Shown: one piece after another, positions 34,568 through 64,000 of the stretch
Layout: every line of letters starts with the position of its first letter
How positions within the stretch are numbered: the stretch's first letter is position 1
From: Podarcis gaigeae
Lineage: Eukaryota
Reading direction: 5' to 3' (one strand)
NCBI GenBank assembly: GCA_964106915.2
Contig: OZ066916.1
Length of the DNA: 64,000 nucleotides
Made by a program: the position numbers and the translations under genes
Notes under the pieces: generated by a model
What the model was told of the DNA's origin: nothing
The model's input: the letters and a program-made list of their open reading frames with translations, nothing else
Databases searched by the model: none

Positions 34568-35966
34568 AATAACTTAAACTTTAATCTGTTTTGTCCTGTG
34601 TGGGTTGGGGGCTGTCAGTGAGAAGAACTGGTCACTGCACTGATTTCTAGACAAGGTAGGACAGTGTCCTAACAAAACAGCACGGCGTCTGGGGTTGTTT
34701 TCCTGTTGGTAGTTGTGCTAACTAGTTCTGACATGTTACACAGAAGTGGGAGCTAATTAAATTTAAAAGCTAATTTCCTCGGGTCATATCCTATGCTGCA
34801 GAACCCCCTGCTTTGAACAGTTTTAACTGTGTGGATAAATCTGTACTTGTTCTGGGCAAAATAAGTTTTGAAAAAATGAGGGATGGTGCATGGTATTGTG
34901 ATGAGAAGTGATGCTAGTCAATTGCCACTGAGAAATAGTGGGGTCTTCTGTTTCATGGATTTAACTGTGCCTGTAAATGGTCCATTCTTTAGCCCCAGAT
35001 TAGGACAAGGGAAAATACCAAGACTAGAACACAGAGCTGAGTCTCTGCCATGGCCCTAAATATGCACCTCTTCTCCACCATAAATTGCTAATAGAAAAAC
35101 AGCGTAGTTGAGATCAGGCAGCCAGTAGGTTTCTAGAAGTAATTTTTCAAACTCACCTCTAGTTTCATAATAGCATCTTCTGAAAAATCAGTACATATAC
35201 TGCCCACTCTGCAGTAAGCCCCACCAAATACTGTGGATATTATAGTAGCACAACCTAAGCCTAGCAGTAGTAGTTTGCTTTGGGTCTGCCATCTCATTAA
35301 AAATGGGCTCTGCAAGTTGCATATGGAAATATTTTTTGCTAGTTTACTCGCAGATGCTTAGATATTTCGAATGCATTGTTCACAGGCTCCTTGTGGCAGC
35401 TTTGTGTTAAAAAATGTTTTTTGTGACTTTGTCTCAAGGGTTTCTTTAAAAAGGGGGGGCAGGAAAGATTAACTGGAATAGCTGTAAGGATCTCTGCTTG
35501 TTATACTGACTTTTCCATCTGGTTCTCACGACTTTCCCCAGGCCACCACCTACTCCCCAAGCCACCTACCTTTCTCTCTGTCCTTTTCCTGTGCTTTCGC
35601 CTGGCTGGAATGAGTCCTTCAGCTCTGATGATGTTTCATTCTTACTTAGATGGGGGGTGGAGAGATGTGTGGAGCCAACTGGGCAAAATTAAGAGTTCCA
35701 TCTGCTGCCTTGCCCCCTTTTTCCTCTGCCTCTGCCCACTACTGGTATGCGACCCATGGGAGGTTGCTTAGGACAGCAGGTAGCCCTCAGGTACCCCCAC
35801 CCCTGACCTGACCCCTTCCTGTCTTTCCTAGCTCTGTTGTCCAAGATTCTCTAGGGACCAGTTCATGCGTATATTTCCTACAAAGATGCACCCTGCCAAG
35901 TGTACAGCTGATGAAACAGACACTTGCATAATCTTCACACATTATGGCATTCCTAACAAACAAACA

Positions 35967-36168
35967 AAAAATATCCTTCCAGTGGCACCTTAGAGACCGA
36001 CTAAGTTTGTTATTTGTATGAGCTTTCGTGTGCATGCACACTTGCACACAAAAGCTCATACCAATAACCAACTTAGTTGGTCTCTAAGGTGCTACTGGAA
36101 GGATTTTTATTTTTATTTTGTTTTGACTATGGCAGACCAACACAGCTACCTACCTGTAACTAGAACTA
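35967..36168. mobile_element. Inverted (head-to-head) pair of the same Penelope-like repeat with truncated hammerhead cores
   Basis: 35967-36043 is the reverse complement, and 36043-36168 the forward copy, of the 62-kb element unit; the junction lies at the GTGTGCATGCACAC palindrome. Confidence 0.78.
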
Positions 36169-39100
36169 AGGTATTCCTATCCCTCTTGCATATTTTTCAT
36201 CCCCTACAGCAGTACACTTCTCAGCTAGGAGAAATACTCTGCTAGGGTGAAGCAGCCCCCTAACTGGATAGGTCAAGGATTGAATCTAGAACCTTGTACA
36301 TGAAAAGCATTTGCTTTTTCATATACATTGTGGCCCCTGCCTTCCCTCCTGTGCAGTCTAGGAACCGTGTTTTCTGGGAGCCAGGCTTTCAAATAAAATG
36401 TAATGCCAAAGCTTTCAGCTCTCTTGATAAGACGACTCCTTCTACTGAGTGCAAATCCTGGTATTGCAATAGCAGGGTGTCTGGTACAGCTGGCCTTGGC
36501 AGTGTCCTTGTCAAAGCAAAGCCAGGGAGGAAGATAAGAGAAGACTGCAGCCAAAAGGCCTTGGCTGAGAGCAGGCATTAGAGGTTGTGGTGAGACTCCT
36601 AACAATGTGTGGAGTTATTCGTATTAGTATCCGTATATATTTATTTATCCATCCCCCGCGTTCTTCCCTGACAGAGACTCAGGAATGTTATTATCAAAAC
36701 CCAGGAGTTTGTAAAAAGTTTCGATTTTTAACACCACCACCAAATGCTTCTAAATATTTCTAAATCTTCACTCCTTTAAAGCATTGCTCCATTGTTTTGC
36801 AAATAGGGAACGATAGCAGTTTGCTTTCCTCTTAAATGAATTCTGTATGTCTCTGGTTTCCACCAGAGGGCTCAGGCCATACAAAAGTTATTTGAAGGAC
36901 ATCTAGAAGACTGGACTACACCTCACAAATACATAACAATTATTATTTAGATTCATCCAGATTTGCTCATCCTTGTTTTGATTTTTAATTAATCTACCAC
37001 TATGTCTGTAAAGTGTTTAAGAGGAGCTTACAATATTATCTGGTCTTAAAATGTGTTGGTGTTTGACTCACACTTGAGAGTTCATGTAGCAACGAGGCAT
37101 TTGTGAGTATAATAGCACACATCGCTTTCCCCTCAGTCTTGGGGTGGAATCTGATCCAGGGCAGTAATGACCAAACATAATTAGCTGCAGAGGGTTTGTT
37201 TATTGATCTAAATGTAACGACCTGATGTTCACATTCCAGTTTTTATGGACAGGTCTCGGCGAAATGCAGCTGTACTCTGAAAAGGAACCTATAAAGAGCA
37301 GTGCTACACTTTACCATAGCTTCCACCCTCCTCCCTGCTGAGAGCAACAAGGGTAACTGGTTGCAAGTATGAAGACAGGCGAGGCTGGTGGCGCAGTGCC
37401 CATTCGCCCAAATGGACCTGCCACCACCACCAAACAGGCCTCTCAGTTGAAAACCAATGATAGCTAGCCACACCTCCTGAAGGCTCTACAAGGCCAAGTC
37501 ATGCGCATTTGCTTGCAAGCTCTGCAAGGACAAGAAAAGAAATCAGATAAGTTTATGAGTTGTGATGGGGTGGAGTGGAGATGCCAAAGTTTGGGATGCA
37601 GCCATGTCATCTACTGTTTTATAGCTTAGAATACTTTAGACACCACTCATTTTCCTATCCTGCTAAAGCTTGTGTTTTCTAACTTGAAACAAGATCTGCA
37701 GGACACCATCACATACAGAAGCTGCAGTGTATCTCATGCCTGCTGGCTCTTTCACAGAGGAATTATATATTCATATCTCTCAACTGCTCACTAACTGCAG
37801 AATGCACTGCATCTTTATAAAAGCATTTGCTCTCTAGCACCTTATCTGTGCTTGCAAGCAACGTAGGAGGCAACAGGATCATATCAGGGGTCTGGCTGAC
37901 TAGTGTGTGCTCTCTTCGCCAACAGTTTCCCAGATTGGTTTCCTCTGAGTTTGGGAACTGTCTTCCCAAGAGCCACGATTCATAAGCCTGCAGCAGCTTT
38001 TAAAAGTGACAACCCTTTGTCTTCAGAGAAATGGTGTGTGCTTGAAAGACGTGCAATATTCAAGCTTCCTGGTTTGTTTGGTTTTTTTTTAAAAAAAAGG
38101 GAAATAAGGTTTTGTGTGGGTGGGCAGCAACATCACACCACATCAGGCAGACTTTCAGATGCACTGTCCTAGAACTGTATAACTCCATGCAAAACCTTAC
38201 AGTGACAAAACTACGTAACCCTAAACCCTATCAACCCACAAACAGGATTGCATCAAAGACCAGTTAGTGGAGATACTAGTGCAGTCCAGGAACATTTCAA
38301 GAAACTCAGAAATGATTTTTGAATTATGATGCTGTAGACAGTGAGAGTCTCATTTTTCAGATGGCACAATAAGTGATAGCTGTGTAGAATCAGGCAACAT
38401 ATTAGAAAGATTGTGTATATCTCCTTGTTTTAGAATGCTGTTGGTTTTATTGGTCTTTTTTGGATAAAAATTTTGCACCATTTTATGTAAACCAATTAGG
38501 GATTTGTCATTTTCTATTAAGTGGTCTATATGTTTTGTTAGATGAAATCAATCAATATTTTGCCCACACAATTACTATGAGACGCGTGAAGGTTACGAAC
38601 AAATGTTTGCGCTCTCCATTCCTGCTGATAGCAGAAATGTAAGAAAGAAGACACCAGCAAATATCGTAAGCAGATCTTCTTTAAGACAGCTTTTCTCATT
38701 TATGGCTAAGCTGTTTATCCTTAAGTGACACCATCTGTTCTCATTGTCAGTTTTGTGAAGTGTGAATTGGCCAGCAAGAAGAAATACTGTAAACTCAATG
38801 TAGTGCACATGTAAATGCCATACTGAGCTGAGAAACAGGAAGTACGGAAATGAAAACTTGATAATTTTCATTTTATTGTAGACAATTAGTCTGCTTAATA
38901 CTCAGGTCTCCTGTCTGGCCATTCAGAAAGAGACAGAGATTTATGCACAGCAGTGCTAAATCCATCACATATTGCAAAGAACATTGAAAGTTTTATAAAT
39001 CTGTCACTATTACATTCATTGTAGTATGGCAAAGAATAGTAAATAACTATTTCAACCTTAAGTTACAACATAGTTAGACTGAATAATTTTGATTTATGGC

Positions 39101-59870: not shown

Positions 59871-62025
59871 CTTACAATACCATACCATTCTGAAAAAACA
59901 ATTTCAAACCAGAACTTTAAAAACTATACCAACATGAAAGGGACTCAGCTTAGCATATCACTACATCCTAAGCCACACTAGAAGAACAGACTGTAATGCA
60001 CATCACTTTAGAGAAGGAAGGTGACTACCTTTTACAAAATATCAAATTCATCAGTCTCAACCAATTTATTTTTAGAAATCAGCTATTATCATCAGGATCC
60101 TCTGAAGAGAATAACTGAAAGCAGCTTATCTAGCCTACAACACACATTTTTCAGTAAGGTAAGTACCAGCTGAAGAATACTTTATTTTATTTTTACCCTG
60201 AAAGTTTAAAGTGATGTGCCTAAGGGAAACCTATTTTAACTCTATGTACATATTAGTTAAAGCATTTGTTTGGCCCTTTTAAATTCAGAATACAACTTCA
60301 GAGGAAATACATTACTGAGGCTTATAATATTATGAATAAAACAAACATTGAGAAAATGTTCACTCTGTTCATAATACAACTGAGCGTCATTCGATAAAGC
60401 TATTGGCAGTAGGTTCAGGACAAAGGCACTTTTTCACATATCATACGAATGACCTATGGATTCACAAGATTTAGTTCTGGGCAGATGTTAAAAATGGTTC
60501 ACTGTGACTACCAGGTTGACTCTCATTATCATAAGCTGAGGAAAAACTGGCTCTGCATTAAAAAGACTTCCAAGGCTTGTGTTAGGGTCACTCTCCACTC
60601 ATGTGCCCAGCTGGGACCAAACACAAACCGAGATACTGTCCACTCAACTGGGACCTTTAACTGTGCACTGCAGGAAAAGGTTGGTAATGGGAGGCATGCT
60701 ATCTTCCAGCTGTTTCCCTTTATCACTTATTTCATTGAAGAACTACCCTGGTGTTCTTCAGAAGTCTATAGACATAGATCTAAAACCACCATTGCAATGG
60801 AGCAAATGTACAGTTGATATTCATTTGCAGCAGCATGGGAAAAAGTATTTCCTCAAGGTAGCACTCTGTTGTAAGGATATCACATTTCCCTGGCACTTTC
60901 AAAACACAAGGTTTTATAAAAACCATTTCCATACAGCTCTATAACAGAAAATGACAGCTGATGAGTGACCTAACTGCTGCCTGTTCTATGCACTCTCTGT
61001 TTTCTGAATTTCTTTTTAAAACCTGTTGTTTATGAAAAACGTGTAACTTAGATTTTGAGTGCTTCCCCCATACTACTCATGGCATACTTATAGGAGGGGG
61101 AATGGTGAACACGAAAAACCTATCTTTTTCCTCACACGACCTCACAAAAATGACTAGAAGAAAATGAAACAACTGAATAGGATGAAGTCAGGAAGTTAAC
61201 AGTGGGGCTGCCTACCAAATCTCTGCTGAGAGAGCGTTCCACAGAATGGGAATGGCAACACTAAATGTCTGACCCATAGTTGAGACCAGGAAGGCTTCGG
61301 AAACATGGGAAACTAACAGTACTAGGCAACCAAGCTGGGAAATAAGAGTGCAGGTGGTCATTAAGATATCCTGGACCTAACTTGTTCACGGCTTTGCAAA
61401 TAATAATATGAAGATCAGACATACAATTTGAAAAACAATGTACTAATCTATAAAATATTAATAGTATTTCAATACCATAGGAAATAACTTTTATTAACAA
61501 AGGCTTTGTGAGTCTTCTTCAAAAGAAAGGTATAAATTCATTTGTAATAACTTAGCTTCATTGGGGTATATTCAGTGATGGCTCTGCAGTAGCAGAAAGC
61601 ACTTTTGCAATTCAGGATACCTGATTTTCTTTTATTCTCCCTACTTACTGCAGACCCTTGGAGCCCTTTAAAAGCTGCTCATGGTATGGGGGACCTTCAG
61701 GTATAATATGAGACATGTTATAGAAAGCTACAGCAGATACAAGCATTTGGCAAAAAAAATACCTTCCACAAGTGAGAACCAACACTTAACACAAACTGCA
61801 GTGTTAATTTGGAATATATAGAATTGTGATGCAAGAATACTTGGGGAAAAGCAAAAAAGATAACATGATGATCTCACTATGTCCTGAGCACAGTTGACTT
61901 CTACAGTCACTGGGCTTCTTATAAAAAAAATGACAAAAGGAGAAGAACATTATAAGCTAGCTTTAAAAATGAACTAGTATGCTGAACAGTGGAGGGGAAG
62001 GAAGTCTTTCAGGTAACCTGGTCCA

Positions 62026-62065
62026 GGTATCTGAAGAAGTGTGCATGCACACGAAAGCTCATACC
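62026..62065 (+). ncRNA. Minimal type-I hammerhead ribozyme motif, copy 1 (predicted cleavage after C62060)
   Basis: Stem I GGTAT/ATACC; core CTGAAGA; stem II GTGTG-CATG-CACAC; GAAA; palindromic AGCT stem III; CUC triplet. Confidence 0.72.
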
Positions 62066-62206
62066 AAGAACTAACTTAGTTGGTCTTTAAGGTGCTACTG
62101 GAAGGAATTTTTTTTGTTTTGACTATGGCAGACCAACACGGCTACCTATCTGTAACTGGAACTATGGAACTGGAACTATGGAAGGCACCACATTGAGCCG
62201 CATGAA

Positions 62207-62246
62207 GGTATCTGAAGAAGTGTGCATGCACACGAAAGCTCATACC
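62207..62246 (+). ncRNA. Minimal type-I hammerhead ribozyme motif, copy 2 (predicted cleavage after C62241)
   Basis: Identical to copy 1, 181 nt downstream. Confidence 0.72.
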
Positions 62247-63137
62247 AAGAACTAACTTAGTTGGTCTTTAAGGTGCTACTGGAAGGAATTTTTTTAGTAT
62301 GCTGAAGTCACATTATAAATTGATGACAATCACTTGTTCAGACAAGAGTAAGTTCACATTACTATAGAATAACTAGGATTTCAAGAGTGGACCAGTTTCT
62401 AAGTTCTATCTTAAAGCCTAATGTTACTAAATAATGGCATTGCAGCTTACTAGACAGATGATCTTTTGCAATATATAGTGCTGGAACTTCAAACGTATCT
62501 GAGGTTTCAAAAACACTTTTTTTCACATAGAGTATCCCAGGATGAATCCCTGGTCTCTTCAGTTAAAAGGGATTGGGAGCAGCAGGTAATGTTAAAGACT
62601 ATCAATCTGAAACTCTGGAGAGAGACTGCCAGTCAGAGTAGACAATACTAGGCTAGACAAAGAAATTGTCGAACCTGGTATAAGGCAGACTACCAACCAG
62701 ACTACCAACATTTATTTTGAGCACAGTCCTATTAGAAACAGAGTTGAAAACTTATCAGGTTAACAGGGTTAAAATGGTACCATTAGAGTCTATTTTGTAT
62801 TGTTTTGCTTTATATATGTCTGCCTTGTGTTTTCATTGTACATCACCTTGAAACAATTGTATAGAAAGTGATTAATAAACTGATGATGATAAGAAGAACA
62901 TTAACCCCAATATTTGAAACTATTAAGATAAGGATGGGGAATATTTTTTTGGCCACATTCCCTCTTGGCCAATTTTCTGAGGGCCAAGACAAATGTGGGC
63001 ATGTACCACACATGCAGACTCTCACTCTTCACACCCCAAGCATCTGCCTTGGAAACTGCAGCTCCATAAAGCCTCCTCATGCAGCTCAAAAAGAGCCTCC
63101 TCATACATGACTGCCTATAGAAGGCTTTGTTCTATGC

Positions 63138-63297
63138 CAGGGGTGGCCAACTCCCAAGAGACTGTGATCTAATCACAGAGACTGGCAGTGATCTACCCCC
63201 TGGGGGTTCAGGTCAAAGTTGTTGAGCTTTTTTTTTAAGGAGGAAGAAAGCCTTGGGGTTTTTTTGGGGGGAGAGATCTGCCTGTTGGAAGTGCCTG
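63138..63297. mobile_element. hAT-type MITE
   Basis: CAGGGGTGGCCAAC...GTTGGAAGTGCCTG termini, TSD TTCTATGC/TTCTATCC. Confidence 0.65.
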
Positions 63298-64000
63298 TTC
63301 TATCCTAATTGCTGTAGGGGGGAGGGAATGCTGCAGGCAGGATCAGAAGGAGCAGCTGACCACATCCAGTCCATGGGCTCCCTGTTCTTCATCCTATTTA
63401 TTAAGATATGAACTTCATTATATGTGCACTGTAAACAATTCTGAATCCTATATCTGCTTATAAGTCCTTAAACATAACTGTTATAAGAATTAGTGAGTGG
63501 GAAAATTAGAGCGAGAAATGGGAAGGAGTCTACTGTACTGTGGCCCAGCTCCAACACCTTAATCTTAGTTAATGTTCATCTAAATCTCTGCAGCCCTAAC
63601 TTATTTTGTCTGTCCTCTAAAGAGATCTAGAAGACTTATTCTGGTGAAATATGAAGATTTTCTACCTGAAGAAATAAAACAGACTGCCAATGTTTCTTAT
63701 GGGCATGGTCCTATTCTGGATGAAATTTTCTTCACCATAGTAAAATCCTGGAATTGTGTGTTATTCAGACTTAACCTATACAGCATTGCTCTACAACTGT
63801 TACTGAATGATAATAATCAGACTGATACATTTTATTCTAATATGCTCATACCCATGCCTGCTACTACTTACTATCGTATGTACTTAATTTTTTGCATGTT
63901 GTTTGTAGCCACTGTCTTGTCCATAATAGTACTTATAATTTGGATTTAGCGGCCCAATACTATAAAGTTGTGAGAGATAGTTATTTGTTCCATCTAACAA

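What the first reader, a model, noticed from the sequence alone, without database searches (positions are those of the whole stretch)
61975..62306. Young insertion carrying two tandem minimal hammerhead ribozymes 181 nt apart (Penelope-like / retrozyme-type element)
Seen: a 308-bp insert with a perfect 12-bp TSD contains two 100% identical 90-bp repeats. Each begins GGTAT-CTGAAGA-A-GTGTG(CATG)CACAC-GAAA-GC-TC-ATACC. This gives stem I (GGUAU/AUACC), the CUGANGA core, a 5-bp stem II, GAAA and a CUC (NUH) site. Stem III is reduced to the palindrome AGCU, which cannot close in a monomer. Established: Penelope-like elements and animal non-LTR retrozymes carry minimal type-I hammerheads with palindromic stem III that work as dimers, and tandem copies release monomers that can circularise. 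Inference: the two copies could pair through AGCU/AGCU, cleave after 62060 and 62241 and release a 181-nt non-coding RNA (internal stem GTTGGTCT 62079-62086 / AGACCAAC 62130-62137), mobilised in trans by an autonomous Penelope RT. There is no ORF, the repeats are identical and the TSD is intact, suggesting a recently active, possibly uncharacterised lizard family. The ribozyme strand is antisense to GOPC, so the host pre-mRNA would not be cut. Caveats: there is one extra A after the core, and the 38 nt before copy 1 differ from those before copy 2.
Basis: partly seen in the sequence, partly recalled or inferred. Interest (0 to 1): 0.88.

Follow-up and report, generated by a model that had tools for sequence, protein, structure and literature searches.

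The report
Penelope-type mini-retroelement with two hammerheads
A 308-bp piece of a very abundant lizard "jumping gene" family, carrying two copies of a tiny self-cutting RNA motif, was pasted into an intron-like stretch next to the GOPC gene; it is real but an ordinary member of a class already described, and the RNA data show no sign that it cuts itself or forms a circle.

Summary
A 308-bp insert (61987-62294) lies between perfect 12-bp target-site duplications. It holds two identical 90-nt repeats 181 nt apart, each starting with a complete minimal type-I hammerhead motif.

Reads from public runs show that only 62027-62157 (hammerhead plus a 59-nt hairpin) is the abundant family. Its depth is about 100,000 times that of the single-copy flanks. 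Copies end either near 62115-62121 or near 62157. This matches the two internal reverse-transcription start sites, and the 30-40 bp "tail" between them, described for an Anolis PLE.

The 38-nt leader and the 49-nt spacer that make up the 181-nt unit are minor variants.

RNA from a related species reads the repeat equally in both directions, and 97% of reads run on into unrelated flanks. No read ends pile up at the predicted cleavage sites, and the unit-specific spacer has almost no RNA.

Verdict: this is a non-autonomous PLE-derived (retrozyme-like) mini-element. The class assignment is right. Self-cleavage and a 181-nt circle are unproven, and novelty is low. This scan had already found the same family elsewhere in this genome.

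The parts
61975..61986 (.). Left target-site duplication TAGTATGCTGAA
   Evidence: (D7)
61987..62294 (+). The inserted element, 308 bp, with no ORF above 38 aa. Layout: leader, then module A, then spacer, then module A truncated at its T-run.
   Evidence: Both junctions are also present in contigs of DNA run X1 (table 8, records 1 and 8).
61987..62025 (+). It is a low-copy sequence: depth about 90-120 against 11 in the flanks.
   Evidence: tables 2-3. It has no significant similarity to the unit (score 20, against 16.6 +/- 2.9 for shuffles).
62026..62065 (+). Minimal type-I hammerhead motif, copy 1. Helix I: 62026-30 / 62061-65. Core CUGAAGA: 62031-37. Unpaired A: 62038. Helix II: 62039-43 / 62048-52, with loop CAUG. 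GAAA: 62053-56. Palindrome AGCU: 62056-59. C17: 62060, with predicted cleavage 62060|62061.
   Evidence: Architecture as in PMC4209133.
62079..62137 (+). 59-nt hairpin (GUUGGUCU...AGACCAAC) with a U8 run (62108-62115) in its upper part, followed by an AC-rich stretch. Inferred to be the region where the PLE reverse transcriptase binds and starts.
   Evidence: It is predicted in all folds. The family's 3' ends fall at 62115-62121 and about 62157 (table 7). The comparison is with PMC11167929.
62027..62157 (+). Extent of the highly abundant family core (hammerhead plus hairpin plus 'tail').
   Evidence: table 2: summed word depth is 0.6-1.3 million here, against 11 in the flanks. Loose ends lie at 62027 and 62156-62158.
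62158..62206 (+). Subfamily-specific spacer that completes the 181-nt unit. A 14-nt tandem duplication (62151-62178) overlaps its start.
   Evidence: D6. In one search, DNA depth is about 7,500 (about 0.6% of the core) and RNA depth is about 1.
62207..62246 (+). Minimal hammerhead motif, copy 2, identical to copy 1. C17 is at 62241.
62247..62294 (+). Second copy of the linker and the 5' half of the hairpin. It ends inside the T-run, which is the family's proximal 3' terminus.
62295..62306 (.). Right target-site duplication. Its first T could equally belong to the element's T-run.
   Evidence: D7, D1
35962..36171 (.). Older locus of the same family. Two truncated copies lie head to head, joined inside the helix II palindrome near 36043: a minus copy at 35962-36043 and a plus copy at 36043-36171. 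They are 88-91% identical to the young unit.

Best explanation
The insert is a short, non-coding derivative of a Penelope-like retrotransposon, also called an animal 'non-LTR retrozyme'. It was copied into this site by a PLE reverse transcriptase/GIY-YIG endonuclease supplied in trans. I infer that the template was a linear, more-than-unit-length transcript of a source locus with the layout leader - module - spacer - module. Reverse transcription then started internally, in the U-run of the downstream module's hairpin, which is the family's proximal start site. It ran back through the spacer, the upstream module and the leader, leaving a 12-bp target-site duplication. Each module carries a PLE-type minimal hammerhead with no helix III of its own. 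By analogy with published PLE hammerheads, two copies could form a double hammerhead, with helices I and III built between the copies. They would then cut after 62060 and 62241, probably slowly and with protein help. Shown here: the insertion anatomy, the motif, the family's abundance and boundaries, and the lack of RNA evidence for cleavage. Inferred: the PLE machinery, internal initiation, and any catalytic activity.
For: - TSD, identical repeats and motif.
- The motif occurs only at these two places, with 0 hits in 100 shuffles.
- It meets every feature that Cervera & de la Pena 2014 list for metazoan PLE hammerheads: the CUGANGA and GAAA boxes, an unpaired base between 9 and 10.1, G10.1-C11.1, a palindromic 15.1-16.1, and a helix I of 4-5 bp.
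- The Anolis Poseidon_Ac consensus has the same architecture with an unrelated sequence at its tandem junction: CUGAGGA-U-GCCUGC...GUGGGC-GAAA-CG-UC (read by eye).
- Family core 62027-62157 has about 1.1-1.3 million summed depth against 11 in the flanks.
- The four pieces in this 64-kb window extrapolate to the same order of magnitude, roughly 10^5 copies.
- There are two classes of 3' end. The proximal class (62115-62121) includes this insert and the old minus copy. The distal class (about 62157-62167) includes the old plus copy and the loose ends. They lie 36-50 nt apart.
- The distal end is about 120 nt after position A9. In the Anolis PLE, reverse transcription starts 111-118 nt after the equivalent position, and a 30-40 bp 'tail' lies between its two start sites.
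- Head-to-head inverted joins occur both in the window and in contigs (table 5). This fits a PLE enzyme that nicks and extends both strands.
- Reptile retrozyme consensus lengths average 176 bp.
Against: - No RT/GIY-YIG ORF lies in this window, and no parent element with this hammerhead and hairpin was identified, so the link to a particular PLE clade is untested.
- The sequence is not similar to Poseidon_Ac beyond its architecture.
- Some of the loose ends near 62108-62121 may come from T-run length variation or subfamily divergence rather than from true termini (tables 4 and 7).
- Conservation of the hammerhead relative to the rest of the unit could not be shown. Among the rows printed, 1 of 39 hammerhead positions and 6 of 92 other positions vary at 5% or more in the DNA run, which is not significant, and 35 rows were not printed.
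- No cleavage ends were seen in RNA.
- The double-hammerhead fold is 22 kcal/mol less stable than the minimum-energy fold, which pairs the two 14-nt helix II palindromes with each other.
Confidence: 0.85

Rival explanations
1. One reading: this is an active retrozyme. The two hammerheads dimerise through AGCU/AGCU and cleave. The 181-nt monomer is then ligated into a circular RNA, which is the transposition intermediate copied by rolling-circle reverse transcription.
For: The tandem layout, the 181-nt unit, the TSD and the lack of an ORF fit the published description of animal retrozymes. Reptile retrozymes averaging 176 bp are reported. The unit-specific spacer is multi-copy in DNA run X1, at about 7,500 against 11. 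The two repeats are identical.
Against: - The leader 61987-62025 is not the end of the unit, so the insert is not a pure multimer of a circle.
- RNA runs X23 and X24 show a depth of about 1 over the spacer against about 300 over the core, no pile-up of ends at the cleavage sites, equal depth in both directions, and 97% of reads running into unrelated flanks.
- PLE-type minimal hammerheads cleave poorly in vitro.
- Eight of nine Xenopus retrozyme dimers did not cleave.
- In Anolis, no RNA-seq reads end at the hammerhead site, and ribozyme mutants still insert.
- The motif lacks the loop-loop contacts of canonical retrozyme hammerheads.
Confidence: 0.15
2. This is a dead by-product. The hammerhead sequence rides along as part of the 5' region of a PLE transcript and has no role for this element. 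The 10^5 copies are just 5'-truncated PLE ends decaying neutrally.
For: Most copies are solo fragments embedded in host transcripts in both orientations. G12>A, which is CpG decay and inactivating, reaches about 13% of depth in the DNA run and is present in the old copy at 36 kb. Hammerhead mutants do not impair insertion in vitro.
Against: The same architecture is kept across unrelated PLE sequences: this family versus Poseidon_Ac, and across animals generally. That implies selection on master copies. The family's sharp 5' boundary at 62027, exactly at the start of helix I, is not what random 5' truncation would give.
Confidence: 0.35
3. This is a chance hammerhead-like motif in an ordinary SINE or LINE-mobilised repeat.
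For: There is no Rfam hammerhead hit. The fold of the 131-nt core is no more stable than shuffled sequence, z = 0.39.
Against: The descriptor had 0 hits in 100 shuffles. All PLE-specific hallmarks are met. There is no tRNA-like part and no poly-A or LINE-type tail. The termini pattern is PLE-like.
Confidence: 0.03

Closest known systems
Minimal hammerheads of metazoan Penelope-like elements (Cervera & de la Pena 2014, PMC4209133; dimer cleavage per Lunse et al. 2017, known here only as cited in PMC6765202)
   Same: Type-I topology. CUGANGA and GAAA boxes. An unpaired base between 9 and 10.1. G10.1-C11.1. Helix III reduced to a palindromic tetranucleotide. A short helix I with no loop 1. Massive dispersal as solo motifs, with occasional pairs on opposite strands.
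   Different: Here the motifs flank a 49-nt spacer plus a hairpin instead of a 2.5-3 kb RT/GIY-YIG ORF. Helix II is 5 bp and sits inside a perfect 14-nt palindrome.
Poseidon_Ac (PAc) of Anolis carolinensis (Frangieh et al. 2024, PMC11167929)
   Same: The same hammerhead architecture at the junction of tandem units. An AC-rich region and hairpin about 110-120 nt after A9, where copies end. Two alternative ends 30-40 nt apart (the 'tail'). Insertion into AT-rich DNA. Partial tandem copies.
   Different: There is no sequence similarity beyond the core boxes. There is no ORF. The parent clade (Poseidon, Neptune or other) is undetermined.
Animal non-LTR retrozymes (Cervera & de la Pena 2020, PMC7229834; Li, Clavereau & Pollet 2026, bioRxiv 10.64898/2026.07.22.740005)
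   Same: Non-coding tandem units within the 170-400 nt range, each with a type-I hammerhead. Low GC. A TSD longer than 4 bp. Co-occurrence with PLEs. Reptile families averaging 176 bp.
   Different: Only 1.5 units are present, with a non-periodic leader. The hammerhead is the PLE-type minimal form without loop-loop contacts. No circular or unit-length RNA was detected.
Earlier finding of this scan, s1-656169 (same genome, MDN1 intron)
   Same: A short TSD-flanked insert with two tandem hammerhead motifs (186-nt spacing) of an abundant lizard family. It was judged ordinary, and no RNA circle was seen.
   Different: It is a different locus with a slightly different unit length. I did not compare the sequences directly.

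Membership tests
PLE-type minimal hammerhead | Conserved core boxes CUGANGA and GAAA, and an H17 cleavage-site base preceded by U16.1 | tested here: met
   CUGAAGA at 62031-37, GAAA at 62053-56, U16.1 and C17 at 62059-60; identical in copy 2
PLE-type minimal hammerhead | An unpaired nucleotide between A9 and G10.1, and a G10.1-C11.1 pair | tested here: met
   A at 62038; G at 62039 paired with C at 62052. The feature is listed in PMC4209133.
PLE-type minimal hammerhead | Helix III absent or 1 bp, with palindromic positions 15.1-16.1, so that two copies can build it in trans | tested here: met
   AGCU at 62056-59. The nested double-hammerhead structure can be drawn, with an energy of -64.8 kcal/mol when enforced.
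PLE-type minimal hammerhead | Self-cleavage, as a dimer | not testable with these tools
   There is only indirect evidence: no RNA-seq ends at the sites in runs X23 and X24, which come from a related species.
PLE-type minimal hammerhead | Covariation in helices I and II among family members | tested here: inconclusive
   Only two other, truncated copies lie in the window. The variant table is partial. Scans of the metagenome, viral and prokaryote collections gave no true copies. Across families, the comparison with Poseidon_Ac shows different helices but the same architecture.
Penelope-like element (autonomous) | A single ORF with a telomerase-like RT and a GIY-YIG endonuclease | tested here: not met
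   No ORF above 38 aa lies in the insert. I recognised no RT-like sequence among the window's ORFs of 70 aa or more, by eye only. The element is non-autonomous.
Penelope-like element (insertion signature) | Partial tandem copies (pseudo-LTRs), a variable TSD, and alternative 3' ends that differ by a 30-40 bp 'tail' because reverse transcription starts internally | tested here: met
   1.5 tandem units and a 12-bp TSD. The 3' ends lie at 62115-62121 and at about 62157, as compared with PMC11167929.
Animal non-LTR retrozyme | Tandem non-coding repeats of about 150-450 bp, each with a type-I hammerhead | tested here: met
   181-nt spacing, two motifs, no ORF
Animal non-LTR retrozyme | Expression as abundant linear and circular unit-length RNA | tested here: inconclusive
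   The unit-specific spacer 62165-62195 has an RNA depth of about 1, against about 300 for the core. There are no end pile-ups. However, the RNA runs are from organism H, whose contig piece on the right flank (62395-62560, X17) differs from the window at about 4% of positions. In H's contigs the spacer also makes up a smaller share of the core's depth than in DNA run X1 (about 0.09% against 0.6%).

The most novel reading that the evidence does not exclude
The 181-nt-unit subfamily, whose spacer has several hundred times the single-copy flank depth in DNA run X1, is a currently active lizard retrozyme. In the window's own species it would be cut by its double hammerhead with help from the PLE protein, circularised, and copied from the hairpin's internal start sites. 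The 131-nt module of hammerhead plus hairpin would then be the minimal cis-acting cassette that recruits a PLE reverse transcriptase.
Probability: 0.15. Interest if true: 0.45.

Novelty: new member of a known kind. Interest (0 to 1): 0.2.

Why it matters
It matters little as a discovery. Hammerheads in Penelope-like elements, their action as dimers, their derivatives (retrozymes) and their presence in reptiles are all published, and this scan had already met the same family in this genome. The locus is still a clean, young example. It has an intact TSD and identical repeats, and it shows in one small insert the two published signatures of PLE integration: a partial tandem copy, and a 3' end at an internal start site. 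The 131-nt module, present about 10^5 times, delimits what may be the minimal RNA a lizard PLE enzyme needs in cis. That could be tested with the in vitro system published for Anolis.

Tried and rejected
- **Rfam at E<=10 over 61000-63500:** no hammerhead family matched. I do not count this against the motif, because it has no closed helix III (my inference).
- **Search for divergent copies for a covariation test:**
  - A metagenome scan with a two-block pattern gave 18 loci. None has the hammerhead core upstream of the match and none resembles the family, so I take them all as chance matches.
  - A stricter three-block pattern gave 0 hits in the prokaryote genome collection and 0 in the viral collection.
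  - No covariation test was therefore possible.
- **Earlier findings of this scan:** look-ups by place, by sequence and by the word GOPC returned nothing.
- **Leader as a diverged copy of the unit:** rejected. The local alignment score is 20, against 16.6 +/- 2.9 for shuffles, with a shuffle maximum of 30.
- **tRNA-derived SINE:** rejected. ARAGORN finds nothing.
- **Unusual thermodynamic stability of the 131-nt core:** rejected, z = 0.39.
- **First double-hammerhead model:** with helix I formed in cis, the structure is a pseudoknot. I redrew it with helices I and III both formed between copies, which is nested.
- **Failed script:** one folding script was killed by the sandbox and was rerun.
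- **Lunse et al. 2017 (PMC5785218):** not held in the library, so it is cited only through PMC6765202.
- **Not possible here:** Repbase/Dfam naming of the family, and a genome-wide census.
Full report
**What is in the sequence**

- A perfect 12-bp direct repeat, TAGTATGCTGAA, lies at 61975-61986 and 62295-62306 and brackets a 308-bp insert (D7).
- Inside the insert, 62025-62114 and 62206-62295 are identical, 181 nt apart (D1).
- Each copy begins with GGUAU-CUGAAGA-A-GUGUG(CAUG)CACAC-GAAA-GC-UC-AUACC.
- In hammerhead numbering this gives:
  - helix I (5 bp);
  - the core C3-A9;
  - one unpaired A;
  - helix II (5 bp, with G10.1-C11.1);
  - G12-A14;
  - a helix III reduced to the palindrome A15.1-G-C-U16.1;
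  - C17, at 62060 in copy 1 and 62241 in copy 2.
- A descriptor demanding all of these features matches only these two places in the 64-kb window, and matched nothing in 100 shuffles of the window.
- Rfam finds no hammerhead even at E<=10. I read this as the models needing a closed helix III, but I did not test that.
- The insert has no ORF above 38 aa and no tRNA-like part.

**Gene context**

Exon-like ORFs of GOPC lie on the minus strand at 48.1-55.6 kb. The PDZ piece matches the GOPC PDZ structures in the PDB at E = 1e-6. DCBLD1-like exons lie on the plus strand at 15.7-34.4 kb; I named these by eye from the ORF translations.

The element therefore lies 5' of the known GOPC exons, in gene orientation, and is antisense to the gene. 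I could not tell whether it sits in intron 1 or upstream of the gene, because no first exon was seen between 56 and 64 kb.

**What the family is**

One call laid four public runs on 61700-62600.

DNA run X1 (coded organism A):
- It carries both junctions of this very insertion, in contigs with about 1% differences in the flanks. The insertion is therefore not private to the assembled individual.
- Its flank depth is 11, while 62027-62157 has a summed depth of 0.6-1.3 million.
- The tool warns that this figure is not a copy number. Even so, it gives the same order of magnitude, about 10^5, as extrapolating from the four pieces seen in this 64-kb window.
- The leader 61987-62025 has a depth of only about 90-120.
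- The spacer, measured over 62165-62195, has about 7,500.

So the abundant family is the 131-nt module of hammerhead plus hairpin. The 181-nt unit and the leader are minor variants.

Loose ends mark a sharp 5' boundary at 62027, the first base of helix I. They mark 3' boundaries at 62115-62121 and at 62156-62158.

The window's second locus of the family (35962-36171) consists of two truncated copies joined head to head inside the helix II palindrome. One ends near the equivalent of 62120 and the other near 62157-62167. The present insert ends in the T-run, at the proximal site.

**Comparison with the literature**

Cervera and de la Pena (2014) described minimal hammerheads in the terminal repeats of PLEs across animals, including reptiles. 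Apart from the boxes their search imposed, they list four recurring features:
[quoted passage not shown] - the G10.1-C11.1 pair;
- palindromic 15.2-16.2 positions.

They also note low activity in vitro, seen only as dimers or trimers. The single motif here shows the last three of those features. The first could not be tested here (see "What could not be settled").

Frangieh et al. (2024) showed several things for Poseidon of Anolis carolinensis:
- The hammerhead straddles the junction between tandem units.
- Reverse transcription starts internally, at two adjacent sites in an AC-rich stem-loop 111-118 nt into the ORF, which begins at A9.
- The 30-40 bp "tail" of genomic copies is the stretch between those two sites.
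- Both DNA strands are nicked and extended.
- The ribozyme cleaves only with protein present.
- Ribozyme mutants still insert.
- No RNA-seq reads end at the cleavage site.

Here the distal family end lies about 120 nt after A9 (62037), after a hairpin and an AC-rich run. The proximal end lies 36-42 nt upstream of it.

The Poseidon_Ac consensus given in that paper has the same motif architecture but no other similarity to this family (compared by eye). This family therefore belongs to another PLE lineage, which I could not name.

Li, Clavereau and Pollet (2026 preprint) argue that animal retrozymes are non-autonomous PLE derivatives. They report retrozymes in four of five reptiles, with a mean consensus length of 176 bp, and only one of nine Xenopus dimers cleaved in vitro.

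**Mechanism**

The most economical reading has four steps:
1. A source locus with the layout leader - module - spacer - module was transcribed.
2. A PLE enzyme supplied in trans nicked this AT-rich site.
3. It began cDNA synthesis in the U-run of the downstream module.
4. It copied back to the leader.

The non-periodic leader has no significant similarity to the unit. That speaks against a pure rolling-circle copy of a 181-nt circle.

For catalysis, the two motifs can form a nested double hammerhead in which helices I and III are both built between the copies. Enforcing it gives -64.8 kcal/mol. Two separate monomer folds give -74.4. The minimum-energy fold gives -87.2, and in it the two 14-nt helix II palindromes pair with each other. 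These are nearest-neighbour energies without tertiary contacts. They fit the published picture of weak, assisted cleavage.

**RNA evidence**

Runs X23 and X24 are stranded bulk RNA-seq raw reads from coded organism H. A contig of H (run X17) that covers the right flank differs from the window at about 4% of positions. In those two RNA runs:
- Depth is about 300 over the core in each direction.
- 97% of laid reads continue into unlike sequence.
- No place qualifies as a pile-up of read starts or ends.
- Depth is about 1 over the unit-specific spacer.

The repeat is therefore read mostly as a passenger inside longer host transcripts. Nothing points to cleavage or to a unit-length RNA. The spacer subfamily is also rarer in contigs of organism H (run X17), so this is weak evidence about the window's own species.

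**What could not be settled**

Conservation of the hammerhead relative to the rest of the unit is inconclusive.
- Among the printed rows, only G12>A (13% of depth; a CpG site) and C17>U (3%) vary inside the motif in the DNA run.
- Six positions outside the motif vary at 10-35%.
- However, 35 rows were not printed, and the difference is not significant.

Attempts to fetch divergent copies from other collections found only chance matches or nothing.

**Verdict**

The proposed self-excision and circle are unproven, and the available data do not favour them. Novelty is low. An earlier report of this scan on the same genome (s1-656169) reached the same conclusion for a sister insertion.

Noticed in passing
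window 62055-62090 and 62259-62270 (family-wide, from RNA runs X23/X24): There are strand-specific A>G differences in RNA reads. At 62078, for example, 124 of 356 reads in one direction show it against 14 of 300 in the other. They are nearly absent from DNA run X1. This looks like ADAR-type A-to-I editing of the repeat, as expected if inverted copies form double-stranded RNA. No DNA from the same individual was available, so it is unproven (table 3).
   Followed up: partly
window 35962-36171: An older locus of the same family. Two truncated copies are joined head to head inside the helix II palindrome near 36043. The plus copy has G12>A (CpG decay) and a 7-nt insertion in the T-run. Similar 'opposite strands' joins at 62027 appear in contigs of X1 and X17 (table 5).
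   Followed up: partly
just upstream of 62027 in other family copies (table 7): In RNA of organism H, most copies share the upstream sequence ...CTTCTGTTTCAGT directly before helix I. This is a pyrimidine tract plus AG, like a 3' splice site. In D. virilis Penelope an intron ends exactly at the 5' end of helix I (PMC4209133). That might explain the family's sharp 5' boundary. This is speculative.
   Followed up: no
window 61751-61790, minus strand: GTTGGTTCTCACTTGTGGAAGGTATTTTTTTTG resembles the family's hairpin 5' arm plus T-run, in the opposite orientation and with a deletion. It lies about 200 bp from the insert. It may be a very old relic of the same family or a chance match. No extra read depth is seen there (I1, 17, 48).
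   Followed up: partly
window 4.4-34.4 kb (+) and 48.1-55.6 kb (-): DCBLD1-like exons (CUB, LCCL, discoidin; named by eye) lie on the plus strand and GOPC exons on the minus strand, so the two genes converge tail to tail. A GC-rich stretch with long ORFs on both strands, which looks like a CpG island, lies at 4.4-5.2 kb.
   Followed up: partly
window 62039-62052 and 62220-62233: Helix II plus its loop is a perfect 14-nt palindrome (GUGUGCAUGCACAC). Two copies can therefore also pair through helix II. This inactive pairing dominates the predicted minimum-energy fold of the 308-nt transcript (I3, 24).
   Followed up: yes
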